64,000 nt of DNA from IMGVR_UViG_3300042892_005961:62001-126000, one strand, 5' to 3'; counted from the first letter of the stretch, positions 40,265 to 60,166 are shown. The notes: a model not told the origin generated them from the sequence alone. Translations and numbers: made by a program.

Positions 40265-40265
40265 A

Positions 40266-41817: not shown

Positions 41818-44800
41818 TTATGATTTTTTAGGAGTTGCGATATTAGGGTCAACTTCAGTTAAAGCAAACTTATATACTTTACCCTTCTTATTATTATATA
41901 AGAATAAATCATCTTCACCCTCTACTATTGTCCAATCACCAATTCCGTTATTTAAAGATAAATCCGATGTATAAACTGTACTCCAACGAGCGGCCGCCGA
42001 ACCTAAATCTCTTGTTCCATTTGCCTCAGGTAAAACGTTACCTGCCACCGTTAATGTTGATCCGTCAAATGTTAAATTGGCTTCAGCATTTAATGTAACA
42101 CCACCGGCACTTGTCATTATTCTATTATCAACCGCATTTGTAATTGTTGTTGTACCACTAGAACCTGAAGAACCGTTACTACCACTAGAACCTGAAGTTC
42201 CAGAACTACCGTTAGAACCTGAAGAACCACTAGTTCCTGATGACCCTGAACTACCCGATGTTCCACTAGAACCTGAAGATCCGTTAGATCCACTAGAACC
42301 TGATGTACCACTAGACCCTGAAGAACCATTTGAACCTGATGTTCCTGAAGATCCACTAGTACCTGAAGTTGCCGCAGTATATGATGTTCCGTTTATTGAT
42401 AATGAACCAGTTATACTTAAACTACCCGTAACTTGATGTGTGTCATCTAATGTGTCTCCAAACTTTGTTGATCCTGAAGAATACATAACAGATGATGTAA
42501 CATATGTCATGAAAAGTTCGTCAGCCGTAATTGCTCCCTTAACTTTAAAAGAACCTGTAATCTCAACATTTTTAGTTGCCGACCATATAGACCCTGTTTG
42601 TGCGAATATTGAATCTCCCGATGAACCACTTGAACCATTGGAACCTGAACTACCTGATGTTCCACTTGATCCTGAAGTACCTGAAGTACCACCTGAACCA
42701 GACGATCCTGATCCACCACTAGAACCTGATGTACCTGATGTTGCGGACGTATATGATAGACCACCAATTGTAACTCCATTTGTAAAATTAGCTGAACCCG
42801 ATACGATAATATCGTCACCAAAAACAACACTATTACCACCTGAACTTAATATTTTAGATCCGTCTTGTAGTACAATATTTCCTCTAACATCAACCGAACC
42901 CGTCGTTGGGTCAATTAATATATTACCTCCACCTGATGATTTCAATTGAATATCTCCATCCACAGTTTGGAATGTGATTGTATCTGTACCTTGTTCTAAA
43001 ATCTTAATTGATTGACCGTTGTCAGTTGTAATCTGTAATTCTTGGTTTGTACTACCCAAAACTTTTTGTCCGTCAATGTATAATGATGCACTTGATAAGT
43101 ATAAGTGTCTAAATGGATTTGACTCACTACCTAAATCAAAAGAACCACTACCCACAGGTACAATTGACCCACTGAATGTTTGTGTTCCTTTAAACGTATT
43201 TGAACCTGTTGTTGCAAAACCTAAATTTGTTCCTTGAACACTTGAACTTACTATATTACTACTTAATAGAGCTGAAGATAAATCAACCGCTCCACTTACC
43301 ATATGTCCTCCTCTAACAACGTTCACACTACCTGAAACTGCAAGTGGGAAATAAACATTAAGATTATTATTATCAACAGATTCTATTCTACTTGGTATGA
43401 TTATACTTCTACTATCATCCCAAACCGTAACAACAGGGAAATCAATACCTAAATTATGAAATACAGACCATGTTGTTAATGATGCAAATGTTTGTGTTGC
43501 TCCACCAATACCATCTCTACCACTTGTTCCTGATGTACCATTTGATCCTGATGAACCCGAACCTCCACTTGTTCCTGAAGAACCGTTAATACCACTAGTT
43601 CCTGAAGAACCATTAATACCACTCGTACCTGATGAACCGCTAGTTCCAGATGAACCACTTGTACCTGACGTACCCGCAGTTCCCGCTCCACCAACTGTTA
43701 CACTTATTGTTCCCTCTTGTGCAAATGGGAAATATACACTTATATTATTTGTGTCTGTTGAAATTATTTCACTTGGGATTACAATACGTCCGTCATTATC
43801 AAATACTTGAACTGATGGATATCTAACACCCATTTGGTGATTAAATGACCATGTGGCTGCTGCAACACTAACGTTTTGTGTTTTTGTTTGTCCGTTTAAT
43901 ACAACGGCGTTTAAAGCATGTGATGCCGTTAATGCGTATGATGAACTTGCAATTGTTGTTGTTGAACTTGATACGTATGAATTAAACCATGACTCATCTA
44001 ACTTACCTGTTCCAACAACTGCACCATTAACGTATAATGATCCAGTAATCTTTACAGATCCAGTAAAATTGTGATTATCATCTAATGTATTACCAAATGC
44101 CGTAGATCCTGATTCAAATAATACTGAAGATGTAACTAATGCCGTATGAATTTCTTTTGCTGTAAGTGTTCCTGTAATTGTTAAATCACCATTAACTTTT
44201 GCATTATTTGTTGTTTCCCAAACTGAACCTGTTAAAGCAAATAAACTATCTCCTGATGATCCTGATGAACCACTTGTTCCTGTTGTACCACTTGACCCTG
44301 CTGTTCCTGAAGAACCTGCTGTTCCTGAAGAACCGCTAGATCCTGATGTACCTGATGAACCGTTACTTCCACTAGTTCCTGATGAACCACTAGTTCCTGA
44401 AGAACCTGAAGTTCCTGTGGATCCACTAGACCCTGATGTACCTGAAGAACCATTAGATCCGCTAGAACCTGATGTTCCCGCAGTTCCTGAACTTCCTGAT
44501 GAACCATTTGAACCTGACGTACCTGAAGAACCACTAGATCCTGATGTTCCTGAACTACCTGAAGAACCACTAGTTCCTGTAGAACCGCTAGATCCTGATG
44601 TTCCTGAACTACCTGAAGAACCTGACGTTCCAGAAGAACCATTACTACCCGATGTTCCTGATGAACCATTAGATCCTGAAGTTCCACTAGAACCACTTGT
44701 ACCACTTGTTCCCGATGTTGTGGACGTATATTCGGTTCCATTTATATTAAATGAACCTGTTAAATTAATTGAACCTGATAAAATTAAATTATTGTTTTCA

Positions 44801-45309
44801 TCAAGTAACATTTGTCTGTTACCATTTCTACTGAAAACTAAACCATCAATATCAGTTGTTGCACCTCTTGCAGCACCTATCGTCCAATTCTCTCCACTCC
44901 AATTAAAACGAACACCCGATGCGACTCTATTTGGTGTGTTAAATCCTGCTGCATTATAAATTGAACTATCAGGAACAAATGCTTGAACATTTGCAACGGG
45001 GTCCGAACCTGATACTACTAATGATGTTAATGATGTATTCCCTAAAACTCTTAAAGAACCTGACGTATTTAAAGATCCTGTAATATTTTCTGTTCCAATT
45101 AAATTGAAACTACCACTAAGATTTAATGAACCTGTGTTCTGAGCATTTGTAGTAACTATTTCCTCAATAGAGGTAGAAGCCGATCCTGATTTGGCAAAGT
45201 ATAATTTACCGTCGGTTGTGTTTATTGCTATTTCCCCTAATTGTAATTGGGAGTTAGTAGGTCTATTCCCACCAGTGGAACTTCTACGTAGTTTTACTAT
45301 TTGACTCAT
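41818..45309 (-). CDS. Long tail fibre, 1163 aa, with Gly-X-Y Ser/Thr tracts
   Basis: Mtd-N-like N-terminus (KLRRS...GEIAINTTDGKLY), several G(S/T)S tracts and repeated TGSL beta modules; C-terminal DLSLNNGIGDWTIVEGEDDLFLYN fibre domain. Confidence 0.8.
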   Translation of the reverse strand: MSQIVKLRRSSTGGNRPTNSQLQLGEIAINTTDGKLYFAKSGSASTSIEEIVTTNAQNTGSLNLSGSFNLIGTENITGSLNTSGSLRVLGNTSLTSLVVSGSDPVANVQAFVPDSSIYNAAGFNTPNRVASGVRFNWSGENWTIGAARGATTDIDGLVFSRNGNRQMLLDENNNLILSGSINLTGSFNINGTEYTSTTSGTSGTSGSSGTSGSNGSSGTSGSNGSSGTSGSSGSSGTSGSSGSTGTSGSSGSSGTSGSSGSSGTSGSNGSSGSSGTAGTSGSSGSNGSSGTSGSSGSTGTSGSSGTSGSSGTSGSNGSSGTSGSSGSSGTAGSSGTAGSSGTTGTSGSSGSSGDSLFALTGSVWETTNNAKVNGDLTITGTLTAKEIHTALVTSSVLFESGSTAFGNTLDDNHNFTGSVKITGSLYVNGAVVGTGKLDESWFNSYVSSSTTTIASSSYALTASHALNAVVLNGQTKTQNVSVAAATWSFNHQMGVRYPSVQVFDNDGRIVIPSEIISTDTNNISVYFPFAQEGTISVTVGGAGTAGTSGTSGSSGTSGSSGTSGINGSSGTSGINGSSGTSGGSGSSGSNGTSGTSGRDGIGGATQTFASLTTWSVFHNLGIDFPVVTVWDDSRSIIIPSRIESVDNNNLNVYFPLAVSGSVNVVRGGHMVSGAVDLSSALLSSNIVSSSVQGTNLGFATTGSNTFKGTQTFSGSIVPVGSGSFDLGSESNPFRHLYLSSASLYIDGQKVLGSTNQELQITTDNGQSIKILEQGTDTITFQTVDGDIQLKSSGGGNILIDPTTGSVDVRGNIVLQDGSKILSSGGNSVVFGDDIIVSGSANFTNGVTIGGLSYTSATSGTSGSSGGSGSSGSGGTSGTSGSSGTSGSSGSNGSSGSSGDSIFAQTGSIWSATKNVEITGSFKVKGAITADELFMTYVTSSVMYSSGSTKFGDTLDDTHQVTGSLSITGSLSINGTSYTAATSGTSGSSGTSGSNGSSGSSGTSGSSGSNGSSGSSGTSGSSGSSGTSGSSGSNGSSGTSGSSGSNGSSGSSGTTTITNAVDNRIMTSAGGVTLNAEANLTFDGSTLTVAGNVLPEANGTRDLGSAAARWSTVYTSDLSLNNGIGDWTIVEGEDDLFLYNNKKGKVYKFALTEVDPNIATPKKS

Positions 45310-45330
45310 ATATATGTGTTCTAAATCCTT

Positions 45331-45367
45331 GTGATATATATCACGGTTAAAGACCTATGTAGGTCTT
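45331..45367. repeat. Two adjacent inverted repeats in the fibre gene leader
   Basis: GTGATATATATCAC (45331-45344, perfect palindrome) and AAGACCT-ATGT-AGGTCTT (45350-45367). Confidence 0.75.
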
Positions 45368-45370
45368 ATG

Positions 45371-45380
45371 ATAAATACTT
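45371..45380 (-). promoter_or_regulatory. AAGTATTTAT motif (candidate late promoter)
   Basis: Exact 10-mer just downstream of a terminator and upstream of the 1163-aa fibre gene. Confidence 0.55.
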
Positions 45381-45390
45381 GTTATAAATA

Positions 45391-45419
45391 AAAAAGGAGA
45401 CTTTTTATAGTCTCCTTTT
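45391..45419 (-). terminator. Intrinsic terminator
   Basis: AAAAGGAGACT-6nt-AGTCTCCTTTT stem followed by a T run on the minus strand. Confidence 0.8.
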
Positions 45420-45422
45420 GTT

Positions 45423-45593: not shown

Positions 45594-45618
45594 TTTAATT
45601 TAATTTTATTTAATTTTA

Positions 45619-48600
45619 TTAAGGTTGTTCAGCACAAACACTTTTGTCCGATACTATTCCTGTATATGAAATTCTTCCTGAATATGGTGATCCTCCACTA
45701 TTTAAAGAAAACGCATGAGTTTCATTTTCACCGGTATATACGTTTACTAAATTAGGATCTGTAAAGAATTGTTCTACATTAAATGGTTGATCTGCTGTTG
45801 CATATACTGTAGTGTAGAAATCCATACCGTAATTTTGACAAGCCAAACTCGATGATGTATAAGATGGTCCTAATTGATAAGCATATGATGTTGCAGGTAC
45901 AGGTGTTGCAGTTGGTTCTGCTGTTGGTGGGAATGGTGTTGGTGTTGGTGATTGTGTTGGTTCATTTGTAGGAACTTGTGTTGGTTCTGCTGTTGGTGGG
46001 AATGGTGTTGGTGTTGGTGATTGTGTTGGTACGTTAGTTGGTACTGCTGTTGGTTCTGGTGTATTAGTTGGTACCGCTGTTGGTATATTTGTAGGTACTG
46101 CTGTTGGTACGTTAGTTGGTTCAGGTGTTGCTGTTGCTGGTAATGGTGTTGGTGTTGCTGTAGGTGCCGCCGGACAAGCTGTACAAGCTGTTTGTGCTGT
46201 TCCTGTTTGTGCCGAACCATCTCTCATAAACTCTCTTTCATCTGTACCATTAGAAACCCAGAATGTGGTGTTATTAGTCATATCACCATACACGTTACCA
46301 TACAATGTGGATGATAAACCTTTTATTTGAGTTAAGTTACATAATGATGTACCCTGTACGGTAATATTAACATTACCATATTCACCACCAGTACATGCTG
46401 TTGGTCCGTTAACTAAACTAACATAACCACTAAACGTAGTTTCAAATGGAGTTGGTTGTGGTGTTGGTGTTGCAGTTGCTGGTACAGGTGTATTTGTTGG
46501 TATTGCTGTTGGTACCGCTGTTGGTACCGCTGTTGGTACCGCTGTTGGTTCTGGTGTTGGTGTTGGTGATTGTGTTGGTACGTTAGTTGGTACTGCTGTT
46601 GGTTCTGGTGTATTAGTTGGTACCGCTGTTGGTATATTTGTAGGTACTGCTGTTGGTACGTTAGTTGGTACTGCTGTTGGTTCTGGTGTATTAGTTGGTA
46701 CTGCTGTTGGTACTGCTGTTGGTACTGCTGTTGGTTCAGGTGTTGCTGTTGCTGGTAATGGTGTTGGTGTTGATGTTGATGGATTAGCGCAGTCGCCGTT
46801 TACAGTACAAGGTGTTCCATTATCTACCACAGTCAATAATCCAATGTCGTCAGATATTATATCAGTACCTGACTGTATACATACCACTCTATTTGCACCA
46901 TTTGCAACCGACCATGAAACTAAACTACCATCTGAACATCTATTATATTCAAATATTATATTTCTATCTCCAGACTCATTATAAACTGTAACACATTCAC
47001 ACGATACCGGTGTTGGTGTTGGTGTTTCTGTTGCTGGTAATGGTGTTGGTGTTGGTGTATCTGTTGCCGGTAACGGTGTTGGTGTTGGTGATTCTGTTGG
47101 TGCGTTTGTTGGTTCAGCTGTTGGTGTTGGTGTTGGTGTTGGGGCCGATATTGTAGAACAATCTATTACTGTAGAAATCATACCATCATTATCCACAGTT
47201 ACAATATAACTAATATTTGCACCTTGCGTTGTTACTAATTTGTAAATATATCCATTAGGTACTAAGTATTGATTTTTAGTACATTCATTTGAGAATAGAT
47301 AATTACCGGTTTCTAAAGTTGATCCACCGACTATGTAATATACAGTATCAGTATCTGATTGGCATACATCATATAAACTATTTGGATTATACGTTTGTTT
47401 CGCATTAAATGCAATTGGAGGTAGTATTGTTGCACAATCATTAACAGATGTCACCATACCAGTATTATCCACTGTTACCAAATATGTTATATCTGAACCA
47501 TCAGTTGTTATTAATTTATAGAGATAATTGTTTGGAACTACTTGAGTTAAAGTTGAATCGGTGTATAAATAAATTCCTGGATCATTAATACTACCTGAAT
47601 TTATTGCATATACATTATTCGTACCTCCTGATGTACAAGCACAGTATAAACTTTCAGTACCATCAATTTGTAAACCATTGAACTCCGTTAATGAAACTGG
47701 TGTAGAAGTTGGTGTCGGTGTAACCGTTGGTGTTGATGTTGCCGGTAATGGTGTAGGTGTATCTGTTGGATTAGGTGTAGGTGTTGGTGTTGGTCCACTT
47801 ACATTTAAACAATTTATTAAACTGTATATTTCTCCATTTGGACCTCCATCAATAACGTATTTATTTATCGCATCTTCAATAATGTAGTAATCTCCCCCTA
47901 TTAAACCAAATATTGAAGTAAGTCCAGAATCACTATATAAAATATGTCCTGTATTTAATGATGGATATTCTGTGTAAACAGTATTATTAACTGATCCATT
48001 TTGACACGCAAAATAAGGTTCAAAATATCCTGTGACATCTATTTGATAAGAATATGACACAATTGTTGGTGTAGGTGTTGGTGTACTTGTTGCTGGTATT
48101 GGTGTTGGTGTTGGTGTATCTGTTGGTGTTGGCGTATCTGTTGGTACTTGTGTTGGTGTTGGTGTATCTGTTGGATTAGGTGTTGGGGTACTTGTTGCTG
48201 GTATTGGTGTTTCTGTTGGTGTAGGAGTTGTAGTTGTTGCATTGATACAATCAACACAATTAGGGTAGAACGTAATTGGAAAACTTCCGTCATCAGGTGT
48301 TGCATCAATTTTATTAACAATAGTATAACACTCGCTTAAAGTTGCACCTGTAAATTCTAAAAAGAAAGTATCGCCCGGTGCTAAGGTTGAACTTATTAAA
48401 TTTGCAATAAGTGTATTTGAACTAGTACATCCTGAGATGGTATAAGTTGTTACCGAAGTTAAATCTTGAGTTGGTGATGGTGTCGGCGTATCTGTTGGAT
48501 TAGGTGTTGGTGTACTTGTTGCCGGTACTGGTGTTGGTGTTGGCGTTGCCGTTGCGACAATTACCGTTGGTGTTGGTGTTGCAGTTGCACATGGAATACT

Positions 48601-48786
48601 AAAAGTACAAGTTTGACTAAAATCAGTAAAGTATAATGAATAATCACCTAAGTAGTTATCACTTACATAATTGTAAGGAACAACATGTGAACCTAAGTTA
48701 ATAGTTCCCCCACTACATGGTGAAAATGTAATTGTAGCAGTTTGACCACTATAATTTGTTGTTAATATCTGAACTGTTGTTGCCAT
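45619..48786 (-). CDS. Mucin-like Pro/Thr-rich virion protein with interspersed Cys-containing domains
   Basis: Many PTPTP / ATPTP / TAVP linkers separate roughly 60-90 aa domains containing paired Cys; no signal peptide evident. Confidence 0.7.
46003..46120 (+). repeat. 118-bp direct repeat, copy 1 (copy 2 at 46552-46669)
   Basis: Read-through comparison shows identical sequence 549 bp apart within the PT-rich gene. Confidence 0.8.
46552..46669 (+). repeat. 118-bp direct repeat, copy 2
   Basis: Identical to 46003-46120. Confidence 0.8.
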
Positions 48787-48805
48787 TTTATATCTATCTT
48801 TATTT

Positions 48806-49198
48806 TTATATTATATTATAAGTTATATCACAAGTCATATCAAATGGTACTACATTATATGTAATATCACAAGATGGTACGGATGGTGTTGGTGTTGGTG
48901 TACTAGTTGATACTGATGTAGGTTGTGGTGTTGGCGTTGGTGTATCAGTTGCCGGTAAAGGTGTTTCTGTATTTGTTGGTGTAGGTGTCGGAGTATCTGT
49001 TGGATTAGGAGTTGGTGTACTTGTTGCCGGTAATGGTGTAGCGGTACTAGTAGGTTGTGGTGTTGGTGTATCGGTTGCCGGTAAAGGAGTAGGTGTATTT
49101 GTAACTACATTAGTTGGCGCAGGTGTTGGAGTAGGTGTAGGTGTTCCATTATTAGTATTTGGAACTATTCTAAGTTTTCCTGAAAATTGTATACCCAT
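48806..49198 (-). CDS. Short Pro/Thr-rich protein
   Basis: About 90 aa of PT repeats between a short N-terminal strand and a duplicated C-terminal CDITYN motif. Confidence 0.7.
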
Positions 49199-49206
49199 AG
49201 TACTCT

Positions 49207-49216
49207 ATAAATAGTT
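49207..49216 (-). promoter_or_regulatory. AACTATTTAT motif variant (candidate late promoter)
   Basis: One mismatch to AAGTATTTAT; lies between a terminator and the next ATG. Confidence 0.45.
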
Positions 49217-49233
49217 TATTTTTCTAATAAGAC

Positions 49234-49267
49234 AAAAAAAAAGGAAGATTTTTTAGATCTTCCTTTT
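49234..49267 (-). terminator. Intrinsic terminator
   Basis: AAAAGGAAGAT-7nt-ATCTTCCTTTT stem with a long T run on the minus strand, downstream of the 1116-aa fibre gene. Confidence 0.8.
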
Positions 49268-52728: not shown

Positions 52729-55700
52729 TTAAAAACCACCTAAATCCAATACAATATTATTTTGTTCTTGTGATATTACCCTTTGTCCTCCCATTGATAT
52801 TGAAGCAGAGATAATTTGTGATTGAATTTGAGCTTGCATCATTGCCATAGCACCTGATATAATAAGTGATTCTCTTAATGGATCAGTTGATGTTAATGTT
52901 GTTGTTCCACGTACTGTTAAATCTCCATCAATAATAACTGAACCTGTTGTACGTAATGAACCTGTAAAATCATGTTTATCATCTAATGTATCACCGAATT
53001 TTGTTGATCCTGATTGATAAAGAATTGAAGATGTTACATAATCAATGTTTAATTGTTTTGCTGTGATTGTACCATCAATTACTACATCTGTATTAACTTT
53101 TAATTTTCCATCAGCTAATGATGCACTTACACTACCACTAACAATTCTATCTAAGTTAAGTCCTGTAATTCCTGATGATGGAATATTATATAATCCAGCT
53201 CCATCACCAACAAACGAACCACTAATTGTTCCGTTGTTTACGGTTAAATCACCTGTGTTAATTGTTAAATCACTATTTGTTAAATCAGCTTGACCGTTGA
53301 AGATGTATAAATTAGAACCGCTTGTTAAATAAAGTGAAGAACTGTCAGTCATTATAGTATTACTATCTGTAATACCAAATTCTGATGTAATTCTTAATGA
53401 ACCTGTAATTTCTACATCGTTTGTTGTTGCCCATACGCTACCTGTTAGAGCGAATAAAGAATCTCCACTAGATCCTGACGAACCATCTGATCCACTTGAA
53501 CCTGAAGTTCCTGAAGTTCCATCTGAACCTGATGAACCACTTGTTCCTGATGTACCATCACTACCCGAAGAACCTGAAGTTCCTGAAGAACCACTTGTTC
53601 CTGAAGTTCCGTCCGATCCACTAGAACCTGAAGTTCCACTTGTACCATCCGATCCACTAGAACCTGAAGTACCACTTGTCCCTGATGTTCCCGCAACTTG
53701 TCCAACTGATGTTAAAACAAAAGAATATGCGGTATTACCTTCAGTATACCAAATAACAGTATGAGATGTTGAATCTTGGTTATCAACCAATACTGTAACC
53801 AACATTCTATTTGTTGGGTCGATGGTTGTTGTTGGTAAAACTAAATCGGTTTGTACTTCTGTAGATGTAACTGAATCGGTCCAACCTATGTAAGATGGTG
53901 TACTTACTAATACTGGACCTATTGGTGTACCTGTAGAATCCGTTAATTGTATACTAACTTGAGCAAATAAATGATCGTTTGATGCTTGTTTTAGGAAGTG
54001 TAAATGAAATCTTTGCGTTCCACCTGGTATAACATTAAATCCTAATTCAGGTGTAATAAATGTTGATACTACACTATCGTTAGTATTACCTGGTAAATTA
54101 ATTGTAACTCCTGTTTGTGAAGCTGATGAAGGATATATATCTAAATCTCTGTATGTGTTAATTCCCGATAATTCTGATTGATTAAAATAATACACTTGAC
54201 CAGCAGATATACCTGTTGCACCTGATGTACCACTAGATCCTGAAGTACCATCTGAACCTGAAGAACCAGATGTTCCTGAAGAACCTGATGTACCTGAAGA
54301 ACCATCTGATCCTGAAGAACCACTTGTCCCTGAAGTTCCATCAGATCCGCTAGAACCTGATGTACCACTAGACCCATCACTACCACTAGATCCTGAAGTA
54401 CCTGACGAACCGTCACTACCACTAGATCCTGAAGTACCACTAGATCCATCACTACCTGAAGAACCGCTAGTTCCTGATGTACCATCTGATCCACTTGAAC
54501 CTGAAGTACCACTTGTTCCTGCTCCACCAACAGATGCAACTACATGTCCTGCCGTTGCGACGTTGAAATATACTTCAATTAAATCTTGATTTACACTTCT
54601 TATTGTTTCAGGGATTACTATGTAACCGTTATCATCAAAAACATTAATAACAGGGTATCTTTCATGTAAATTGTGTGTGAAAGACCACGTTGTTGAAGGT
54701 GAAGAAACGTATAATTGTTTATTAGCCCCTGATACTATTACTGCATTTTCCGCAAATATCGCGTATGATGATGTTCCTGCAAATTGTGATGTATTTGAAC
54801 CTGTATATGTGTTAAACGCCGATTCATCTAATTTACCCGTACCAATTGCTTGACCGTTTAATGTTATTGAACCTGTTATATTAACTGAACCCGTAAAATT
54901 ATGTGTATCATCAAATGTGTCTCCGAATTTTGTTGATCCTGAAGAATAGAGAACAGATGAAGAAACCAATGTAATATTATATTCTTCCGCCGTTAGTACA
55001 CCTTTAATTTTTACTGAACCCGTAATTTCAACATTGTTTGTTGTTGTCCATGTTCCTGGTGTTATCTCAGCAAATAAACTATCTCCTGATGTACCATCGC
55101 TACCCGAAGAACCTGATGTACCGCTAGTTCCTGAAGTACCATCGGAACCTGATGTACCTGATGAACCGTCACTACCTGATGAACCTGATGTACCTGAACT
55201 ACCATCCGAACCACTTGTTCCACTAGATCCATCTGAACCACTTGTTCCTGATGTACCATCTGAACCTGAAGAACCACTTGTTCCCGATGTTCCTGAAGTC
55301 ATTGCTGAGAATGAAACACCATCTATAATTAAACTTCCACTTGTAATATTAAGAGATCCCGTTATTGAAGTATTAGTGTTAATATGTAAACCATCTAAAT
55401 CAATTGAAGCTGTATTACTACCACTACCGATTAAATTTAATTGTAATCCTGTAACACCTGATGCTGGTATGTTAATTAAATTACTACCATCACCATAGAT
55501 GTAAGCTCCACTTATTATTCCACCGTCAACATATATGTTTGAACCACTCGTCATGTATAATGACGAACTATCTGTCATTATAATATTAGCATCAACAACT
55601 CCTAATTGGGAAGTTATTGATAATGATCCCGTAATTTCTACGTCATTTGTTGTTGCCCAAACGCTACCCGTTAGAGCAAATAAACTATCACCTGAAGTAC

Positions 55701-58671
55701 CATCTGAACCTGATGAACCTGAAGTACCACTCGTACCATCTGAACCTGAAGTTCCTGATGAACCATCCGTACCATCGACACCCGAAATACCTGAAGTACC
55801 ATCACTACCTGAGGTTCCTGAAGAACCGTCTGAACCCGATGTACCCGATGTACCATCACTACCACTAGATCCTGATGTGCCTGAAGACCCGTCACTACCT
55901 GAAGAACCTGAAGTTCCTGATGTACCATCACTACCACTAGATCCTGAAGTACCTGAACTACCATCCGAACCACTTGTTCCTGATGTACCATCTGAACCAC
56001 TAGATCCTGATGTACCTGAAGACCCGTCACTACCTGAAGAACCTGAAGTTCCTGATGAACCACTTGTACCTGATGTACCAGAAGTCATCGCTGAGAATGA
56101 AACTCCGTCTATTATTAAACTACCACTTGAAATATTAACTGATCCTGATATAAAAACCGAACCCGTAAACTCGTGTGTGTCGTCCGATGTATTACCAAAT
56201 TTATTTGAACCTGATGTATAAAGAATTGAGGAACTTACATAATTAATATTTAATTGTTTTGCGGTTAATATACCATCAATATACGTGTCTCCATTAACCC
56301 TAAATGTTCCATCGGATTGAATAGAAGCGCTTACTGAACCACTTACTATTTGATTTAGTGCTAAATTTGTTACACCACTTGCCGGTATATTATATAATCC
56401 CGCACCATCACCAAAGAAGGCGGCAGTAATGTAACCACCATTTTCTATAATGATATTACTACCACTTGTTAATATAAGTGATGAACTGTCAGTTAAAAAT
56501 AAACTTGAATCAAATACACCTGAACCGTTGGATACTATTAATGAACCCGTAATAGATGTGTTGGTGTTAATATTAAATCCATCTAAACTAACCGAAGCCG
56601 TATTACTACCACTTGTAATTTTATTTAATTCTAATCCTGTTACACCTGAAGCTGGAATATTATATAATCCCGCACCATCACCAAAGAAGGACGCAGTAAT
56701 GTAACCACCATTTTCTATAATGATATTACTACCACTATTTAAAACCATTGAACTACTATCAGTCAAATACAAGAAAGAATTAACCGCATTAGTACCTTGA
56801 CTAACCGTTAACGAACCTGTAATTGATGTATCGGTATTAATGTTAAATCCATCTAAATTAATTGAGGCGGTATTACTACCACTTACTATTTGATTTAACT
56901 GTAAACCTGTAACTCCTGATGCTGGTATGTTAATTAAGTTTGAACCGTCTCCATAGATATAGGCTCCACTTATTATTCCACCATCTACATATATGTTTGA
57001 ACCACTTGTAAGATAAAGTGATGAACTATCTGTCATTATAATATTACTATCTGTAATACCTAATTCAGAAGTTATACTTAAACTACCTGTGATTTGAATA
57101 TCATTTGTTGTTGCCCAAAAAGATCCTGTTTGAGCAAATAAACTGTCTCCTGAAGTACCATCAGAACCACTTGTTCCTGAAGTTCCACTAGTTCCTGATG
57201 TTCCTGATGTACCATCACTTCCTGAAGTACCTGATGTTCCGTCACTACCTGAAGTGCCACTAGTACCATCACTACCGCTTGAACCTGAAGTGCCTGAAGA
57301 CCCGTCACTACCTGAAGAACCACTTGTTCCCGAAGTACCATCACTACCACTAGAACCTGAAGTACCTGATGAACCGTTCGTACCATCCACACCGCTTATA
57401 CCACTTGAACCACTAGTTCCTGAGGTACCATCTGAACCTGAAGTTCCACTTGTTCCATCTGATCCCGATGAACCACTAGTTCCCGATGTACCGTCTGATC
57501 CACTTGAACCCGAGGTACCTGAAGAACCATCCGAACCACTTGATCCCGATGTACCTGAACTACCATCACTACCTGAAGTGCCTGAAGTTCCTGAAGTACC
57601 ATCTGAACCACTTGTTCCTGATGATCCACTTGTTCCCGCAGTTCCACTAGTTCCTGATGTCATTGCAGAGAATGGAACACCATCTATAACTAAACTACCA
57701 CTTGAAATATTAACTGAACCACTGATGAACAATGAACCTGTAAATTCATGTGTGTCATCCGATGTATTACCAAATTTATTTGAACCTGATGTATAAAGTA
57801 TTGAAGAACTTACATAATCAATATTTAATTGTTTTGCGGTAATAATACCATCAACATTTAACGAACCTGTAATCTGTACGTCATTTGTTGTTGCCCAAAA
57901 AGATCCTGTTTGTGCAAATAAACTATCTCCTGATGTACCATCAGAACCACTTGTACCTGAAGAACCCGATGTACCTGATGAACCATCACTACCGCTAGAA
58001 CCTGATGAACCATCTGAACCACTAGTTCCTGAAGAACCATCCGTACCATTTACACCACTTATACCACTTGAACCACTAGTTCCCGAGGTACCGTCCGAAC
58101 CTGAAGAACCTGAAGTTCCGTCTGATCCCGAAGAACCAGAAGAACCGCTTGTACCTGCCGTACCCGCAGAACCAAACCCACCTGTTGATAGGTCTTTTAT
58201 TGAGTCTCCTAAGATATCATCAATCCAATAACCTAAATCGGGAAACGATAATTGATTTTTAGTTAAATTACCCAATTTTGCGACTCCATCAACATATTCA
58301 TAAAAAATACCATAACTTTCTTCAGTCGGTATATTATCTTGTGCAGATGAATTTATATAGATTTCTAAATTGGTATCTTCAAACTCAATATCTGCATTTT
58401 GATTATCATTAACAGTTATAGATTTAACTGTATAAATTTTACCTGTTGGTAATGCAAATTTCCATCCTATTTGTATATCATTTGCATTATATAAATCGTA
58501 ATTTGGTTCGTTCGTTGGATATGTGGCGTCCTGTGGTGTGATATCAACATTACATATAAATGAAAGGTATACCCCGTTATATGAATCGCCAGAAGTCCAA
58601 GTTGTTGAGATTGTTGTACTTCCAAACTTAATTTTACCAATTATTATTTTATCGGGAGTTCCTATTGCCAT
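52729..58671 (-). CDS. Giant fibre protein, 1980 aa, with multiple Gly-X-Y Ser/Thr tracts
   Basis: Several G(S/T)(S/D) tracts alternate with repeated GDSLFA(L/Q)TGS.W.TTN and DGAGLYNIPASGVTGL modules; C-terminal DLGGF. Confidence 0.8.
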   Translation of the reverse strand: MAIGTPDKIIIGKIKFGSTTISTTWTSGDSYNGVYLSFICNVDITPQDATYPTNEPNYDLYNANDIQIGWKFALPTGKIYTVKSITVNDNQNADIEFEDTNLEIYINSSAQDNIPTEESYGIFYEYVDGVAKLGNLTKNQLSFPDLGYWIDDILGDSIKDLSTGGFGSAGTAGTSGSSGSSGSDGTSGSSGSDGTSGTSGSSGISGVNGTDGSSGTSGSDGSSGSSGSDGSSGTSGSSGTSGSDGTSGDSLFAQTGSFWATTNDVQITGSLNVDGIITAKQLNIDYVSSSILYTSGSNKFGNTSDDTHEFTGSLFISGSVNISSGSLVIDGVPFSAMTSGTSGTAGTSGSSGTSGSDGTSGTSGTSGSDGSSGTSGSSGSDGSSGTSGSSGSDGTSGTSGSSGSDGTSGTSGSDGTSGTSGSSGISGVDGTNGSSGTSGSSGSDGTSGTSGSSGSDGSSGTSGSSGSDGTSGTSGSDGTSGTSGSDGTSGTSGTSGTSGTSGSDGTSGDSLFAQTGSFWATTNDIQITGSLSITSELGITDSNIIMTDSSSLYLTSGSNIYVDGGIISGAYIYGDGSNLINIPASGVTGLQLNQIVSGSNTASINLDGFNINTDTSITGSLTVSQGTNAVNSFLYLTDSSSMVLNSGSNIIIENGGYITASFFGDGAGLYNIPASGVTGLELNKITSGSNTASVSLDGFNINTNTSITGSLIVSNGSGVFDSSLFLTDSSSLILTSGSNIIIENGGYITAAFFGDGAGLYNIPASGVTNLALNQIVSGSVSASIQSDGTFRVNGDTYIDGILTAKQLNINYVSSSILYTSGSNKFGNTSDDTHEFTGSVFISGSVNISSGSLIIDGVSFSAMTSGTSGTSGSSGTSGSSGSDGSSGTSGSSGSDGTSGTSGSDGSSGTSGSSGSDGTSGTSGSSGSDGSSGTSGSSGSDGTSGTSGSDGSSGTSGSDGTSGISGVDGTDGSSGTSGSDGTSGTSGSSGSDGTSGDSLFALTGSVWATTNDVEITGSLSITSQLGVVDANIIMTDSSSLYMTSGSNIYVDGGIISGAYIYGDGSNLINIPASGVTGLQLNLIGSGSNTASIDLDGLHINTNTSITGSLNITSGSLIIDGVSFSAMTSGTSGTSGSSGSDGTSGTSGSDGSSGTSGSDGSSGTSGSSGSDGSSGTSGSDGTSGTSGTSGSSGSDGTSGDSLFAEITPGTWTTTNNVEITGSVKIKGVLTAEEYNITLVSSSVLYSSGSTKFGDTFDDTHNFTGSVNITGSITLNGQAIGTGKLDESAFNTYTGSNTSQFAGTSSYAIFAENAVIVSGANKQLYVSSPSTTWSFTHNLHERYPVINVFDDNGYIVIPETIRSVNQDLIEVYFNVATAGHVVASVGGAGTSGTSGSSGSDGTSGTSGSSGSDGSSGTSGSSGSDGSSGTSGSSGSDGSSGTSGSSGSDGTSGTSGSSGSDGSSGTSGSSGTSGSSGSDGTSGSSGTSGATGISAGQVYYFNQSELSGINTYRDLDIYPSSASQTGVTINLPGNTNDSVVSTFITPELGFNVIPGGTQRFHLHFLKQASNDHLFAQVSIQLTDSTGTPIGPVLVSTPSYIGWTDSVTSTEVQTDLVLPTTTIDPTNRMLVTVLVDNQDSTSHTVIWYTEGNTAYSFVLTSVGQVAGTSGTSGTSGSSGSDGTSGTSGSSGSDGTSGTSGSSGTSGSSGSDGTSGTSGSSGSDGTSGTSGSSGSDGSSGSSGDSLFALTGSVWATTNDVEITGSLRITSEFGITDSNTIMTDSSSLYLTSGSNLYIFNGQADLTNSDLTINTGDLTVNNGTISGSFVGDGAGLYNIPSSGITGLNLDRIVSGSVSASLADGKLKVNTDVVIDGTITAKQLNIDYVTSSILYQSGSTKFGDTLDDKHDFTGSLRTTGSVIIDGDLTVRGTTTLTSTDPLRESLIISGAMAMMQAQIQSQIISASISMGGQRVISQEQNNIVLDLGGF
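56387..56736 (+). repeat. Near-identical 80-bp duplication (56387-56466 and 56657-56736)
   Basis: Two mismatches, 270 bp (90 codons) apart, encoding SGSNIIIENGGYITA.FFGDGAGLYNI. Confidence 0.75.
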
Positions 58672-58687
58672 TCTATTTTTGTCTTTT

Positions 58688-60166
58688 TTAACTTATTAAT
58701 CCGAATGTTATTATACAAGTTGATTGAGCCGAACTTGAATATATAGCTCTGTCATACACTAAACCATATAAATCTAACGTTGTCCAATTTGAGGTTGATA
58801 ATGTTTGTATTGCAGACACAGTATTTGTTTGTGGAATTGTACTTCTACCTACAGGTGGAATACTAACAACATTACCATTTGTATTTCCGTGAACCATAAT
58901 ATTAACCAAAGGTTGTACTTGTTTACTTCCAGGTCTTGTTATTGTTAATCTTGAATTTGAAGGACAACTAAATACCCAACCTAAACCTTCTAACGTTGTT
59001 TTATTTTCACCATTAGGTCCCAACACATTCGCAATTGGCGTTCCCGCAGTATCGATATTACCTCCAGTTGTATTTAATGTAATTTGATACATTAATGCGG
59101 CACCCGCTGCTCCCACACCTGAGGAACCTGACGTTCCACTTGTACCAGTTGCTCCACTTGTTCCTGATGAACCACTTGTTCCTGATGTTCCCGTTAAACC
59201 TGAGGTACCTGAAGTACCTGCCGTTCCTGAAGAACCATTAGTTCCTGCAATACCAGATGTACCTGAAGTACCACTAGATCCGTTAGATCCACTTGTACCA
59301 TCCGTACCTCCACCACCTCCACCAACTATTGTAACAGTAACATTACCCGCACCATTATCTGTAACGGTTGCTCCATCAAATGTGATTTGATCTACTCCGT
59401 TAACTAATGTTGATCCGTCACCAACTTTAAGTGTCGTTGTTCCACCTCCTTCTCCTCCACTTATTGAACTATATAAGTTAATTGACCAACTATTATGATC
59501 ACTACCTCCCACATGTTCTAAAATTCTTATTACTAATTGTGTACCTGAATAACTAACAACACGTCCTATTAAATAATTTAATATATTACTCGCAGCAATT
59601 ACAAGTTGACCCGTGGTGTAAGATAAATTACTATCAACTGTGAAAGTAAGATCTTCTCCATCGTATTCGTCAATATCAGTAATGTATGTTGTTGATGATG
59701 TTTGATAAACATTTCCAGATGTACCTGAAGTGCCTGATGTACCTCTAGCACCGGAAGTACCTGATGAACCACTTGAACCGTGATTACCTGAAATACCGCT
59801 TGTTCCTGAAGAACCACTAGACCCGTTTGATCCTGACGTTCCACTTATACCTGAAGATCCTGATGTTCCCGAAGTTCCTGAAGAACCTGTTAAACCTGAA
59901 GAACCACTTGTACCAGATGTACCACTAGTACCTCTTGCACCTGAAGATCCTGAAGATCCCGAAGATCCTGAAGTACCTGACAAACCTGAAGAACCTGATG
60001 TGCCTGAAGATCCTGTGGTTAAATCAGTTAAACTTGTTCCTGAAACATATAAATTATCTGCGTAGACCGCATTTAATGGAGTTGTGGATGAACCGAGATC
60101 AATTGTGGTACCTGGTGTGACTGTTTCTGTATCAATCTGAGTCCAATTTATTCTTTGTAGTGCCAT
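58688..60166 (-). CDS. Fibre/collar-type protein with Gly-X-Y Ser/Thr tracts
   Basis: Two G(S/T)S tracts (with GAR and GLT triplets) flanking a beta domain. Confidence 0.7.
   Translation of the reverse strand: MALQRINWTQIDTETVTPGTTIDLGSSTTPLNAVYADNLYVSGTSLTDLTTGSSGTSGSSGLSGTSGSSGSSGSSGARGTSGTSGTSGSSGLTGSSGTSGTSGSSGISGTSGSNGSSGSSGTSGISGNHGSSGSSGTSGARGTSGTSGTSGNVYQTSSTTYITDIDEYDGEDLTFTVDSNLSYTTGQLVIAASNILNYLIGRVVSYSGTQLVIRILEHVGGSDHNSWSINLYSSISGGEGGGTTTLKVGDGSTLVNGVDQITFDGATVTDNGAGNVTVTIVGGGGGGTDGTSGSNGSSGTSGTSGIAGTNGSSGTAGTSGTSGLTGTSGTSGSSGTSGATGTSGTSGSSGVGAAGAALMYQITLNTTGGNIDTAGTPIANVLGPNGENKTTLEGLGWVFSCPSNSRLTITRPGSKQVQPLVNIMVHGNTNGNVVSIPPVGRSTIPQTNTVSAIQTLSTSNWTTLDLYGLVYDRAIYSSSAQSTCIITFGLIS

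What the first reader, a model, noticed from the sequence alone, without database searches (positions are those of the whole stretch)
41818..60166. Proline-free Gly-(Ser/Thr)-Ser collagen-period tracts: fibres that may need the phage's own glycosylation to fold
Seen: four fibre proteins carry uninterrupted Gly-X-Y runs where X/Y are almost only Ser, Thr, Asp, Asn and Ala. Examples are about 52 triplets at 44251-44712, about 65 at 51580-52158 and about 74 at 50182-50841. Established: Ser-rich triplets have low triple-helix propensity; in Riftia cuticle collagen, galactosylated Thr at Y replaces hydroxyproline as the stabiliser. Inference: these are glyco-collagen stalks (or flexible linkers), O-glycosylated by the adjacent GT7/GT10/GT2 enzymes, giving a self-encoded glycan-armoured virion.
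Basis: partly seen in the sequence, partly recalled or inferred. Interest (0 to 1): 0.78.

Follow-up and report, generated by a model that had tools for sequence, protein, structure and literature searches.

The report
Proline-free collagen-like phage fibres beside sugar genes
A lake jumbo phage builds its tail fibres from long proline-free Gly-Thr/Ser-Ser collagen-type rods. A conserved phage-only sugar-transferase cassette sits next to them, but such rods are common in phages that lack the cassette, so the idea that they need glycosylation to fold remains untested.

Summary
Four minus-strand ORFs (41818-60166) carry 14 uninterrupted Gly-X-Y tracts, 525 triplets in all, with no Pro and no Lys. 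X is Ser or Thr; Y is Ser, then Asp.

They are modular tail-fibre proteins. Length-variable collagen-period spacers alternate with conserved beta-rich nodules. This tract class is widespread in aquatic phages, with runs up to 785 triplets.

The adjacent glycan island is real. Its conserved core is methyltransferase, a GT2/GT92-like enzyme, two GT7 enzymes and two twitch radical-SAM enzymes. In all 47 related contigs the core lies directly downstream of the fibre or lectin genes on the same strand. Each GT7 is a complete beta4-galactosyltransferase fold with an inserted ConA-like lectin domain. No GT10 was found.

- Thr sits at X, not at Y as in Riftia.
- Characterised GT7 enzymes extend sugars; they do not start chains on Ser or Thr.
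- A complete 735-kb phage has 424-triplet tracts and no GT7.
- Six unrelated fibre loci with such tracts have no sugar genes nearby.

Fibre glycosylation is plausible. A requirement for folding is not supported. Verdict: a new variant of a known kind, of moderate interest.

The parts
58688..60166 (-). Fibre protein 4 (492 aa). Gly-X-Y tracts at 59708-60013 (34 triplets) and 59111-59317 (23 triplets).
   Evidence: Pfam Collagen E 9e-22; PHROG tail-fibre families
52729..58671 (-). Fibre protein 3 (1980 aa). Six Gly-X-Y tracts, 216 triplets in all, alternating with repeated beta-rich nodules. It includes a 270-bp internal duplication at 56338-56932.
   Evidence: Pfam Collagen E 4e-80; PHROG tail fibre E 9e-88
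49288..52638 (-). Fibre protein 2 (1116 aa). Tracts at 51574-52158 (65 triplets) and 50176-50850 (75 triplets). The central nodule (window 50851-51573) has relatives in 72 viral loci.
41818..45309 (-). Fibre protein 1 (1163 aa). Four tracts of 52, 22, 14 and 24 triplets. The C-terminal architecture -(GXY)n-[82 aa]-(GXY)m-[109 aa] is conserved in relatives, with n from 10 to 25 and m from 12 to 38.
41203..41814 (-). Small fibre-like protein (203 aa) with a C-terminal endosialidase-type intramolecular chaperone domain (Peptidase_S74).
   Evidence: Pfam E 1.4e-12; PHROG tail-fibre C-termini
35663..41203 (-). Small putative fibre-tip or receptor-binding proteins. Two are ConA-like lectin proteins (35663-36787, 37386-38111). 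Two paralogue groups share N-termini, MP(L/I)xxxGN... and MA(T/N)LxxTT...
   Evidence: Pfam Laminin_G_3 E 1e-17 and 3e-17; PHROG virion structural protein hit; N-terminal alignment
34913..35641 (-). Methyltransferase, first gene of the conserved cassette. Present in 42 of 47 related loci.
   Evidence: Pfam Methyltransf_24 E 1e-11; synteny
34059..34916 (-). GT-A glycosyltransferase, GT2/GT92-like (285 aa), with no transmembrane segment. Present in 44 of 47 related loci. Candidate initiating transferase (inference).
   Evidence: weak Pfam Glyco_tranf_2_4 hit; Atlas neighbours are viral clusters carrying Glyco_transf_92 or GT2
32409..33824 (-). GT7b (471 aa): beta4-galactosyltransferase-like enzyme with an inserted ConA-like domain. 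Keeps the DID and WGWGYEDTD motifs. It is a 30%-identical paralogue of GT7a.
   Evidence: Pfam Glyco_transf_7N/7C plus Laminin_G_3; present in 47 of 47 loci
30967..32412 (-). GT7a (481 aa): a complete GT7 catalytic fold (residues about 1-160 and 395-481) interrupted by a ConA-like/pentraxin-like lectin domain (about 166-393). Keeps the DVD and WDWGQEDDD motifs.
   Evidence: PDB phmmer hit to beta4GalT7, E 6e-31; AF2 model with pLDDT 83; Foldseek; VIA-align Z 23.3, 211 of 241 residues of 3lw6 aligned over model residues 1..481, with the lectin part at Z 16-20
25939..30983 (-). Two twitch-domain radical-SAM enzymes (28161-30983, 940 aa; 25939-27393, 484 aa) with a small unknown ORF between them. 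They belong to the conserved cassette (46 and 44 of 47 loci).
   Evidence: NCBIfam NF033640, E 2e-91 and 3e-88; synteny
258..24179 (.). Variable part of the glycan island. It holds 2OG-Fe(II) oxygenases, an APS kinase, a carbamoyltransferase, DUF5672, a GDSL enzyme, UDP-glucose dehydrogenase, three NDP-sugar epimerases/dehydratases (one fused to a 2OG oxygenase), a dTDP-sugar 3,5-epimerase and split TPP-dependent E1-like enzymes.
   Evidence: Pfam; present in only some related loci
45619..49198 (-). Two Pro/Thr-rich linker proteins (1055 aa and 130 aa; TPTPTP-type linkers between Cys-containing domains). They lie between two hairpin terminators inside the fibre block. They are not Gly-X-Y proteins.
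   Evidence: no Pfam or PHROG family; Atlas uninformative; terminators
49239..49267 (-). Terminator-like hairpin after fibre gene 2. Similar hairpins lie at 45392-45419 and 24180-24204. No strong hairpin lies between 45309 and 24204 on the minus strand.

Best explanation
The four ORFs encode modular, probably trimeric, tail-fibre proteins of a low-GC jumbo phage from lake water.

Each protein alternates conserved beta-rich nodules with Pro-free, Lys-free Gly-(Thr/Ser)-(Ser/Asp) tracts. The tracts most likely form collagen-type triple-helical rods. The rods act as spacers of adjustable length. At about 0.29 nm per residue, 75 triplets give roughly 64 nm, and the 216 triplets of fibre 3 give roughly 185 nm.

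The nodule that follows most tracts begins with a conserved cap, GDS(L/I)FAxTGSxW. Folding is probably nucleated and kept in register by these flanking nodules. This step is inferred.

This tract class is common in aquatic phages and does not depend on the neighbouring sugar genes.

The neighbouring island is a real pathway of soluble enzymes for an exotic glycan. Its conserved core is methyltransferase, a GT2/GT92-like enzyme, two lectin-bearing GT7 enzymes and two twitch radical-SAM enzymes. The core is tied to the fibre module by order and strand and is probably co-transcribed with fibre gene 1.

The most likely role of the core is to build a glycan on a macromolecular acceptor in the cytoplasm late in infection. 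Virion proteins are the leading candidates: fibres, lectin tip proteins or the Pro/Thr-linker proteins. This step is inferred and not shown. A requirement of the glycan for triple-helix folding is not supported.
For: Fibre identity:
- Pfam Collagen and PHROG tail-fibre families.
- An S74 chaperone protein immediately downstream.
- A nodule motif shared with a structural protein of Microcystis phage Mel-JY01 that has no Gly-X-Y tract.

Structural constraint on the tracts:
- 525 of 525 Gly positions are kept despite 12-37% DNA divergence between repeat copies and a free third codon position.
- X and Y are strongly unequal: Thr is 44% of X and 1.7% of Y; Asp is 1.7% of X and 13% of Y. The same asymmetry appears in 120 independent viral loci and in the 735-kb phage LR756501.1.

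Spacer role:
- Nodules of fixed length (82 aa, 109 aa) flank tracts that vary from 10 to 38 triplets at homologous positions.
- 9 of 14 tracts end in the same cap motif.

Spread of the class:
In 102 of those 120 loci the Gly-X-Y frame is the longest ORF. Runs reach 785 triplets.
- In lake metagenomes the tract segments draw word depth up to 27,131 against about 10 for their flanks.

The cassette:
- Conserved order and strand next to fibre or lectin genes in all 47 loci.
- No strong minus-strand terminator between fibre gene 1 and 24204.
- No transmembrane-rich protein among 52 ORFs of the window.
- GT7 fold with an inserted lectin domain.
- Only one hit in 185,579 species genomes, on a 248-kb contig.
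Against: - No structure or biophysics shows that a Pro-free, Lys-free Gly-Thr-Ser tract forms a triple helix. No trimer was modelled.
- From memory of the Persikov host-guest scale, Thr at X and Ser, Asp or Asn at Y are among the less favourable placements. An unassisted helix would therefore be weak, which keeps the glycosylation idea alive.
- The terminator scan is a simple consensus search, so co-transcription is not proven.
- The RNA evidence covers only 39592-42267, comes from a related strain, and may include DNA carry-over.
- The genome-collection scan used only two peptide patterns, so 'phage-specific' holds for close relatives only.
- Published work reads fibre-adjacent sugar genes in aquatic myophages as modifying host O-antigen (PMC7029224, PMC1079782).
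Confidence: 0.7

Rival explanations
1. The tract Ser and Thr residues are O-glycosylated by the adjacent GT7 and GT2 enzymes, and this glycosylation is needed for the Pro-free triple helix to fold or stay folded (a glyco-collagen stalk).
For: - The tracts lack Pro and Lys, and so lack every published stabiliser (PMC11923368).
- That paper reports that (Gly-Pro-Thr)10 is a random coil unless galactosylated.
- The cassette is locked to the fibre module.
- The GT7 and GT92-like families are galactosyltransferase-type families.
- At least 25 of 39 cassette contigs with enough visible sequence also show such tracts. Three of the four that seemed to lack them gained them once more upstream sequence was fetched.
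Against: - Thr is at X, not at Y as in Riftia or BclA.
- GT7 relatives act on sugar acceptors, so a separate initiating enzyme would be needed (established knowledge of beta4GalT1 and beta4GalT7).
- The 735-kb phage LR756501.1 has tracts of 301 and 424 triplets but no GT7 homologue in the whole genome, and no homologue of any island gene within 20 kb on either side.
- Six fibre loci with such tracts from other phages have 46 neighbouring ORFs with no GT or sugar-enzyme family.
- Only 7 of 120 tract loci show any island homologue.
- Contig 3300042398_000969 has the cassette but no tract in about 41 kb seen.
- Fibre homologues next to the cassette can lack tracts altogether (L004, L014, L017, L023, L028, L045).
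Confidence: 0.12
2. The cassette glycosylates virion proteins, but as a surface coat (shielding, solubility or adhesion) and not for folding. The targets need not be the Gly-X-Y tracts. They could be the Ser/Thr-rich nodules, the lectin tip proteins or the Pro/Thr-linker proteins.
For: - The cassette is tied to the fibre and lectin gene module whether or not tracts are visible.
- The enzymes are soluble.
- A lectin domain is inserted beside the GT7 catalytic domain.
- Pro/Thr linkers are classic O-glycosylation sites, and such proteins lie inside the fibre block.
- Precedent: glycans on mycobacteriophage capsid and tail-tube proteins (Freeman 2023, as cited in PMC12619734).
Against: - There is no direct evidence that any protein here is glycosylated.
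- The Pro/Thr-linker genes are not seen in the related loci, although low-complexity masking limits that test.
Confidence: 0.28
3. The island acts on non-virion targets. It remodels host envelope glycans (O-antigen or capsule) to block superinfection or re-adsorption, or it supplies sugars for DNA hypermodification. Its position next to the fibre genes reflects only the hypervariable 'host recognition cluster'.
For: - This is the published reading of similar fibre-plus-GT islands in pelagimyophages and in cyanophage P-SSM2 (PMC7029224, PMC1079782).
- The outer part of the island varies between relatives, like an accessory island.
- It holds many nucleotide-sugar enzymes typical of O-antigen loci.
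Against: - No flippase, polymerase, Gtr-type or other multi-span membrane protein is found among 52 ORFs.
- The core cassette is not variable. It is conserved in order and strand in 42-47 of 47 loci.
- GT7 with the inserted lectin domain gave only one hit in the bacterial genome collection, and that hit is on a jumbo-phage-sized contig.
- No base-modification enzyme such as a dNMP hydroxymethylase is seen in the window, although the window is only 64 kb.
Confidence: 0.3
4. The tracts are not helices at all. They are flexible, disordered Gly/Ser linkers, and their 3-residue period is a by-product of expansion of a 9-bp repeat.
For: - Gly/Ser-rich sequences are usually disordered.
- The residues used have low triple-helix propensity (from memory).
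- Tract length is highly plastic.
Against: - There is not one interruption in 525 triplets here, nor in runs of up to 785 triplets elsewhere. Repeat DNA has meanwhile diverged 12-37%, and Gly third positions and Ser codon families vary freely.
- The X/Y asymmetry is conserved across unrelated phages.
- A disordered linker has no need for either feature.
Confidence: 0.1

Closest known systems
Collagen-like phage tail fibres ('Bacteriophage collagen', Smith et al. 1998; P-SSM2 orf023-028; EPclA-type prophage proteins of E. coli O157:H7)
   Same: Gly-X-Y tracts sit inside tail-fibre proteins and are flanked by trimeric non-collagen domains. They hit the Pfam Collagen and PHROG tail-fibre families (PMC1079782; PMC3368898).
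   Different: The tracts of the cultured examples are Pro-rich. P-SSM2 reads GPT/GPA/GPP/GPS. EPclA is described as rich in Pro at X with about 22% charged residues (PMC11923368). The tracts here have no Pro and no Lys and are about 90% Ser and Thr.
BclA-type exosporium collagen-like glycoproteins of Bacillus, and the Riftia cuticle collagen
   Same: These are collagen-period proteins in which hydroxy-amino acids take the place of hydroxyproline. In BclA and Riftia, O-glycans on Thr are documented (cited in PMC11923368). From memory, sugar-synthesis genes lie next to bclA.
   Different: There Thr occupies the Y position, usually after Pro (Gly-Pro-Thr). Here Thr is at X and Ser at Y, with no Pro. 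Glycosylation is not shown here.
Beta-1,4-galactosyltransferases of CAZy family GT7 (beta4GalT7, beta4GalT1)
   Same: The GT-A fold matches (Z 23, 211 of 241 residues aligned). The DxD motif and the WGxEDDD-type motif are kept. Sequence E-value is 6e-31.
   Different: A ConA-like/pentraxin-like domain of about 230 residues is inserted into the catalytic domain. There is no membrane anchor. The genes occur as two paralogues in a phage cassette. No homologue was found in 50,697 deposited phage genomes. Donor and acceptor are unknown.
Virus-encoded virion glycosylation (mycobacteriophages such as Che8; giant-virus fibrils; chlorovirus capsid)
   Same: The virus carries its own glycosyltransferases and sugar-nucleotide enzymes, which could decorate structural proteins in the cytoplasm (Freeman 2023, as cited in PMC12619734; the giant-virus cases are from memory).
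   Different: In those systems the glycans were demonstrated chemically. Here only the genes and their position are known. The enzyme families also differ: GT7 with a lectin insert, a GT92-like enzyme and twitch radical-SAM enzymes.
'Host recognition cluster' of pelagimyophages and cyanomyophages
   Same: It is a large island that mixes tail-fibre genes, ConA-like and collagen-repeat proteins, and glycosyltransferases (PMC7029224).
   Different: That island is described as hypervariable, dominated by GT8, and is read as modifying host O-antigen. Here a fixed six-gene core is conserved in order next to the fibres.

Membership tests
Collagen-like (triple-helix repeat) proteins | Uninterrupted Gly-X-Y repeats, six or more triplets long | tested here: met
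   14 runs of 14-75 triplets with no interruption. Shuffles give 7 or fewer.
Collagen-like (triple-helix repeat) proteins | Score above the curated Pfam PF01391 cut-off | tested here: met
   77-264 bits against a cut-off of 27.2.
Collagen-like (triple-helix repeat) proteins | A known stabiliser in the tract: Pro/Hyp, Lys-Asp/Glu salt bridges, or Thr at Y | tested here: not met
   Pro 0, Lys 0, Arg 3 of 1050 X/Y positions, Thr at Y 1.7%. This feature is typical rather than strictly defining.
Collagen-like (triple-helix repeat) proteins | Actual triple-helical conformation, with an adjacent trimerisation domain | not testable with these tools
   Only indirect evidence: selection on Gly, X/Y asymmetry and conserved flanking nodules. 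No trimer model, CD or EM.
Phage tail-fibre proteins | Homology to tail-fibre families, and a position in a structural or receptor-binding gene block | tested here: met
   PHROG tail-fibre families, E down to 9e-88. An S74 chaperone protein and lectin tip proteins lie downstream. Relatives sit beside T4-like capsid, portal and baseplate genes.
Riftia/BclA-type glyco-collagen | Thr at the Y position as the glycan carrier | tested here: not met
   Thr is 44% of X and 1.7% of Y. Y is 77% Ser.
Riftia/BclA-type glyco-collagen | O-glycans demonstrated on the collagen-like region | not testable with these tools
   Needs glycoproteomics of virions.
CAZy GT7 (beta4-galactosyltransferase family) | GT-A fold of beta4GalT | tested here: met
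   VIA-align Z 23.3, rmsd 2.6, 211 of 241 residues of 3lw6 aligned across model residues 1..481. Foldseek E 2e-12.
CAZy GT7 (beta4-galactosyltransferase family) | Metal-binding DxD motif and WGxEDDD-type motif | tested here: met
   GT7a has HDVDM and WDWGQEDDD. GT7b has HDIDM and WGWGYEDTD. These positions are invariant or nearly so in 38 homologues.
CAZy GT7 (beta4-galactosyltransferase family) | Transfer of Gal or GalNAc in beta-1,4 linkage to a sugar acceptor | not testable with these tools
   Needs an enzyme assay.
   No such hit in any ORF of the window, including unknown ORFs scanned at E<=1.
Phage systems that modify host O-antigen (Gtr or Wzy type) | Membrane-embedded flippase, polymerase or glucosyltransferase | tested here: not met
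   None of the 52 ORFs has more than one hydrophobic 19-residue segment. This was a crude Kyte-Doolittle scan.

The most novel reading that the evidence does not exclude
Lake jumbo phages, probably infecting Flavobacteriia, run their own cytoplasmic protein O-glycosylation pathway. A GT2/GT92-like enzyme would start the glycan. Two GT7 enzymes, steered by their inserted lectin domains, would extend it. Twitch radical-SAM enzymes and a methyltransferase would tailor the sugars. The product would coat the Ser/Thr collagen rods of the fibres, giving a glyco-collagen whose stability comes from glycans rather than from proline or salt bridges.
Probability: 0.15. Interest if true: 0.85.

Novelty: new variant of a known kind. 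Interest (0 to 1): 0.55.

Why it matters
Collagen-like phage fibres, glycosylated bacterial collagens and virus-encoded virion glycosylation are each known. Two things here appear undescribed in the literature I could search.

1. An abundant class of viral Gly-(Thr/Ser)-Ser tracts has no proline and no lysine, and reaches hundreds of triplets. Current accounts of triple-helix stability rely on imino acids, Lys-Asp/Glu clamps or Thr at Y, and none of these applies. Short peptides or tract-plus-nodule fragments could test directly what holds such a helix together.

2. A phage-restricted GT7 enzyme carries an inserted lectin domain. It sits in a conserved cassette locked to the fibre genes. If it decorates virions, that would extend phage virion glycosylation beyond actinophages to very abundant freshwater phages. 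This would bear on host recognition, on grazing or immune evasion, and on recombinant collagen design.

Tried and rejected
- GT10: looked for in every ORF and not found.
- Solved structures for the fibre nodules: the sequence search of PDB returned only collagens matched through Gly periodicity. The entry 8zxl/9ius 'spindlefibril' is a Pro-rich GAPGSQ repeat and is not informative.
- C-terminal 102 residues of GT7a alone against PDB by sequence: nothing. The structural alignment later showed that this segment is the C-terminal part of the GT7 fold.
- Cultured phages with the same tracts:
  - tblastn is blinded by low-complexity masking.
  - blastn with tract DNA found 12 records. The Erwinia phage pEa_SNUABM_48 hit is a false positive: the real gene is an antisense Pro-Glu-Val repeat.
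  - This prompted the frame check of the 120 IMG/VR loci, of which 14 failed.
- P-SSM2 as a matched case of tracts plus sugar genes: rejected because its tracts are Pro-rich.
- Shared origin of the GT7 lectin insert and the virion lectin proteins: no significant similarity.
- Literature searches for Gly-Thr-Ser, proline-free collagen, or GT7 in phages: nothing specific.
- Atlas search of the Pro/Thr-linker protein: uninformative.

Full report
**1. The observation**

The span 41818-60166 holds six minus-strand ORFs. Four of them contain 14 strictly uninterrupted Gly-X-Y runs, 525 triplets in all. These ORFs are 41818-45309 (1163 aa), 49288-52638 (1116 aa), 52729-58671 (1980 aa) and 58688-60166 (492 aa).

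Composition is extreme:
- No Pro and no Lys.
- X is 48% Ser and 44% Thr.
- Y is 77% Ser, 13% Asp, 4% Asn and 3% Ala.
- The commonest triplets are GTS (213), GSS (172) and GSD (59).

Residue shuffles of each protein never give more than 7 consecutive Gly-period triplets, against 34-75 observed. Pfam Collagen scores are 77-264 bits against a cut-off of 27.

The other two ORFs in the span (45619-48786 and 48806-49198) are Pro/Thr-rich linker proteins, not Gly-X-Y proteins.

**2. Periodic structure or repeat debris?**

The DNA repeat copies have diverged; Tandem Repeats Finder reports 63-88% matches. Even so, all 1050 first and second positions of the Gly codons are intact, while the third position is free (GGT 60%, GGA 36%). 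Ser is written with both TCN and AGY codons.

X and Y are not interchangeable. Thr is 44% of X and 1.7% of Y. Asp is 1.7% of X and 13% of Y.

The same asymmetry recurs elsewhere:
- In 120 independently sampled viral loci, pooled X is 42% Thr and 40% Ser, and Y is 74% Ser.
- In three giant ORFs of the 735-kb phage LR756501.1, X is 72% Thr and Y is 85% Ser.

A disordered Gly/Ser linker needs neither an unbroken Gly period nor position-specific residues. I therefore read the tracts as a real Gly-packed 3-residue helix, most simply a collagen-type triple helix. This is an inference; no trimer was modelled or measured.

**3. What the proteins are**

All four proteins hit PHROG tail-fibre and 'collagen-like minor tail' families, with E-values down to 9e-88.

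The tracts alternate with beta-rich nodules:
- 9 of 14 tracts end in the same cap, GDS(L/I)FAxTGSxWxT(T)N.
- Most tracts start after one of two conserved N-flanks.
- One nodule motif (YVSSS..Y.SGSTKFGDT.DD.H.FTGS) is shared with a structural protein of Microcystis phage Mel-JY01, which has no Gly-X-Y tract at all.

Directly downstream lie a 203-aa protein with an endosialidase-type S74 chaperone domain, several small paralogous proteins with shared N-termini, and two ConA-like lectin proteins.

In relatives the architecture -(GXY)n-[82 aa]-(GXY)m-[109 aa] is kept. Meanwhile n ranges from 10 to 25 and m from 12 to 38. The tracts therefore behave as length-adjustable spacers between fixed modules.

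**4. How common the tract class is**

I scanned IMG/VR with an IUPAC pattern for twelve consecutive Gly-(Ser/Thr-type)-(Ser/Thr-type) codons.

An Erwinia phage hit turned out to be the antisense shadow of a Pro-Glu-Val repeat. I therefore checked frames. In 102 of the 120 loci the Gly-X-Y frame is the longest ORF and extends at least 60 aa beyond the tract. Uninterrupted runs reach 785 triplets.

In lake-water metagenomes the tract segments of this window attract word depths up to 27,131. Their flanks draw about 10. Near-identical coding DNA must therefore sit in very many co-occurring phages.

The collagen-like ORFs of the cultured cyanophage P-SSM2 are a different, Pro-rich class (GPT/GPA/GPP). 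I found no paper describing the Pro-free class.

**5. The sugar genes**

Window 1-38000 is a glycan island. It encodes:
- three NDP-sugar epimerases/dehydratases, one of them fused to a 2OG oxygenase;
- a dTDP-sugar 3,5-epimerase and UDP-glucose dehydrogenase;
- split TPP-dependent E1-like enzymes;
- a carbamoyltransferase, an APS kinase, a GDSL enzyme and DUF5672;
- two further 2OG oxygenases;
- a methyltransferase, a GT2-like enzyme and two GT7 enzymes;
- two twitch-domain radical-SAM enzymes.

No GT10 was found, even at E<=1.

GT7a (30967-32412) matches beta4GalT7 at E 6e-31 and keeps the DVD and WGxEDDD-type motifs. Its AlphaFold model has pLDDT 83. The model aligns to beta4GalT7 over 211 of 241 residues, spanning model residues 1..481 (Z 23.3). 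Residues about 166-393 form a ConA-like/pentraxin-like domain (Z 16-20). The enzyme is thus a complete GT7 catalytic domain with a lectin domain inserted into it.

GT7b is a 30%-identical paralogue with the same layout. The GT2-like protein groups with viral clusters that carry Glyco_transf_92 or GT2.

GT7 with the lectin insert has more than 1,600 metagenomic homologues. It has none in 50,697 deposited phage genomes. It has one in 185,579 species genomes, on a 248-kb contig binned with a Flavobacteriaceae MAG.

**6. Is the cassette linked to the fibres?**

In 47 related viral loci the order methyltransferase, GT2-like, GT7b, GT7a, radical SAM is conserved; each gene is present in 42-47 of the 47 loci. 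The cassette always lies on the fibre strand, directly downstream of fibre homologues or lectin proteins. The rest of the island varies.

Strong hairpin terminators on the minus strand occur only at 49267-49239, 45419-45392 and 24204-24180. Fibre gene 1, the tip genes and the cassette may therefore form one transcription unit. This rests on a consensus scan only.

None of the 52 ORFs has multiple hydrophobic segments. The island therefore has no Wzx-, Wzy- or Gtr-type membrane step.

Metatranscriptome contigs from a related strain cover 39592-42267. DNA carry-over in those libraries cannot be excluded.

**7. Is the cassette linked to the tracts specifically?**

Of the cassette contigs with at least 7 kb of visible upstream sequence, 25 of 39 show Pro-free Ser/Thr tracts. 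Three that showed none within 10 kb (L003, L034, L039) proved to have 430-500 triplets further upstream (L187, L180, L182).

The link is nevertheless not exclusive:
- Contig 3300042398_000969 has the cassette but no tract in about 41 kb seen.
- Several cassettes adjoin fibre homologues without tracts.
- Only 7 of 120 tract loci carry a homologue of any island gene.
- Six tract-bearing fibre loci from other phages have 46 neighbouring ORFs that hit T4-type capsid, portal, protease, baseplate and lectin families, but no GT or sugar enzyme.
- The complete 735-kb genome LR756501.1 has tracts of 301 and 424 triplets, no GT7 anywhere, and no island homologue within 20 kb on either side.

The association is therefore between the cassette and the fibre module of one jumbo-phage lineage. 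It is not between glycosyltransferases and this tract chemistry in general. These flank-limited tests cannot exclude GT genes elsewhere in the genomes.

**8.

The premise is fair. The tracts have none of the published stabilisers. PMC11923368 reports Lys-Asp/Glu clamps as a general folding code, Thr-containing triplets as frequent in bacteria and viruses, and (Gly-Pro-Thr)10 as a coil unless galactosylated. From memory of the Persikov host-guest scale, Thr at X and Ser, Asp or Asn at Y are unfavourable placements.

The analogy is nonetheless loose. In Riftia and BclA the glycosylated Thr is at Y after Pro. Here Thr is at X. Characterised GT7 enzymes extend a sugar rather than start on Ser or Thr, so the proposed assay of GT7 on bare peptides would probably fail even if the model were right. 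The class also exists without the cassette.

Flanking trimeric nodules, a dense hydroxyl-water network and a cold habitat are sufficient alternative explanations. All three are inferences.

My estimates:
- About 0.4-0.45 that the cassette glycosylates some virion protein.
- About 0.12 that it does so on the tracts and is needed for folding.
- About 0.3 that it acts on host glycans or DNA, as published for similar islands (PMC7029224, PMC1079782).

**9. Comparison with known systems, and verdict**

The closest known systems are:
- Pro-rich collagen-like phage fibres;
- BclA- and Riftia-type glyco-collagens;
- mycobacteriophage and giant-virus virion glycosylation;
- the 'host recognition cluster' of aquatic myophages;
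- beta4GalT7 and beta4GalT1, for the enzyme.

The fibres pass the sequence tests for collagen-like tail fibres. They fail the Thr-at-Y feature of glyco-collagens. The GT7 enzymes pass the fold and motif tests but add an insertion with no precedent that I could find.

The phage may belong to, or lie near, the freshwater Flavobacteriia-associated 'moraphage' jumbo lineage, which has four core GT families (PMC12619734). This was not tested.

Overall this is a real feature and a new variant of a known kind. The structural reading is well supported. The glycosylation mechanism is open and directly testable.

Noticed in passing
window 45619-48786 and 48806-49198; also 834-1421, 1418-2032 and 20172-21815: Two proteins made of TPTPTP-type Pro/Thr linkers between Cys-containing domains sit between terminators inside the fibre block. 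The same window encodes three 2OG-Fe(II) oxygenases of the prolyl-hydroxylase-like Pfam families. One of them has OGFOD1, a protein prolyl hydroxylase, as its best PDB match (E 1e-7). Pro hydroxylation followed by O-glycosylation of these linkers, as in extensins or chlorovirus proteins, is a possible alternative substrate for the island.
   Followed up: partly
window 25939-27393 and 28161-30983: Two twitch-domain radical-SAM enzymes (NCBIfam NF033640, E about 1e-90) are the most conserved neighbours of the GT7 pair, present in 44-46 of 47 loci. One carries an N-terminal extension of about 480 aa with no family match. Their chemistry is unknown.
   Followed up: partly
window 42148-42363, 42610-42735 and 43495-43692: In lake-water metagenomes the Gly-X-Y segments draw summed contig word depth of about 930 to 27,000, against about 10 for flanking fibre sequence. 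Many chimeric 'joints' link one tract to another. The tract DNA is shared by very many lake phages and is likely to confuse assemblers.
   Followed up: partly
window 36790-41814: Nine small ORFs downstream of fibre gene 1 fall into two paralogue groups with shared N-termini: MP(L/I)xxxGN...TS and MA(T/N)LxxTT...TSxxSPR. This looks like a set of interchangeable tip proteins that use a common attachment peptide.
   Followed up: partly
L049 (Erwinia phage pEa_SNUABM_48, record 270719-272488): A Pro-Glu-Val (VPEVPVVPE) repeat protein reads as a perfect Gly-Thr-Ser tract on the opposite strand. Scans for Gly-X-Y tracts in raw DNA need a frame check; 14 of 120 IMG/VR hits failed it.
   Followed up: yes
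L172 (Prochlorococcus phage P-SSM2, 18953-28270): The Pro-rich collagen-like fibre ORFs of P-SSM2 are followed directly by piuC, a 2OG-Fe(II) oxygenase. This mirrors the pairing of oxygenases with repeat proteins in the window.
   Followed up: no
window 5256-5693, 7263-8930, 17127-17762 and 23577-24179: The island encodes an APS kinase (sulfate activation), a NodU/CmcH-type carbamoyltransferase, and a split TPP-dependent E1-like pair. This suggests a sulfated, carbamoylated and possibly branched-chain sugar. No sulfotransferase was recognised.
   Followed up: no
window 60244-63807: Upstream of the fibre block lie a glutaredoxin, a thioredoxin, an AAA ATPase, a NusG-like transcription factor and a Dam-type N6-adenine methyltransferase. 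Weak DNA similarity to 634-642-kb 'huge phage' genomes was found only here.
   Followed up: no
L173 (CBFHJJ010000001.1, 248 kb): The only hit to GT7 with the lectin insert in the species-genome collection is a jumbo-phage-sized contig binned with a Flavobacteriaceae MAG. This hints that the host is Flavobacteriia, as predicted for the freshwater 'moraphages'.
   Followed up: no
window 56338-56932: A 270-bp unit is repeated 2.2 times (77% matches) inside fibre gene 3. It duplicates a nodule containing the motif GDGAGLYNIPASGVTGL, which also occurs in fibre 2.
   Followed up: no
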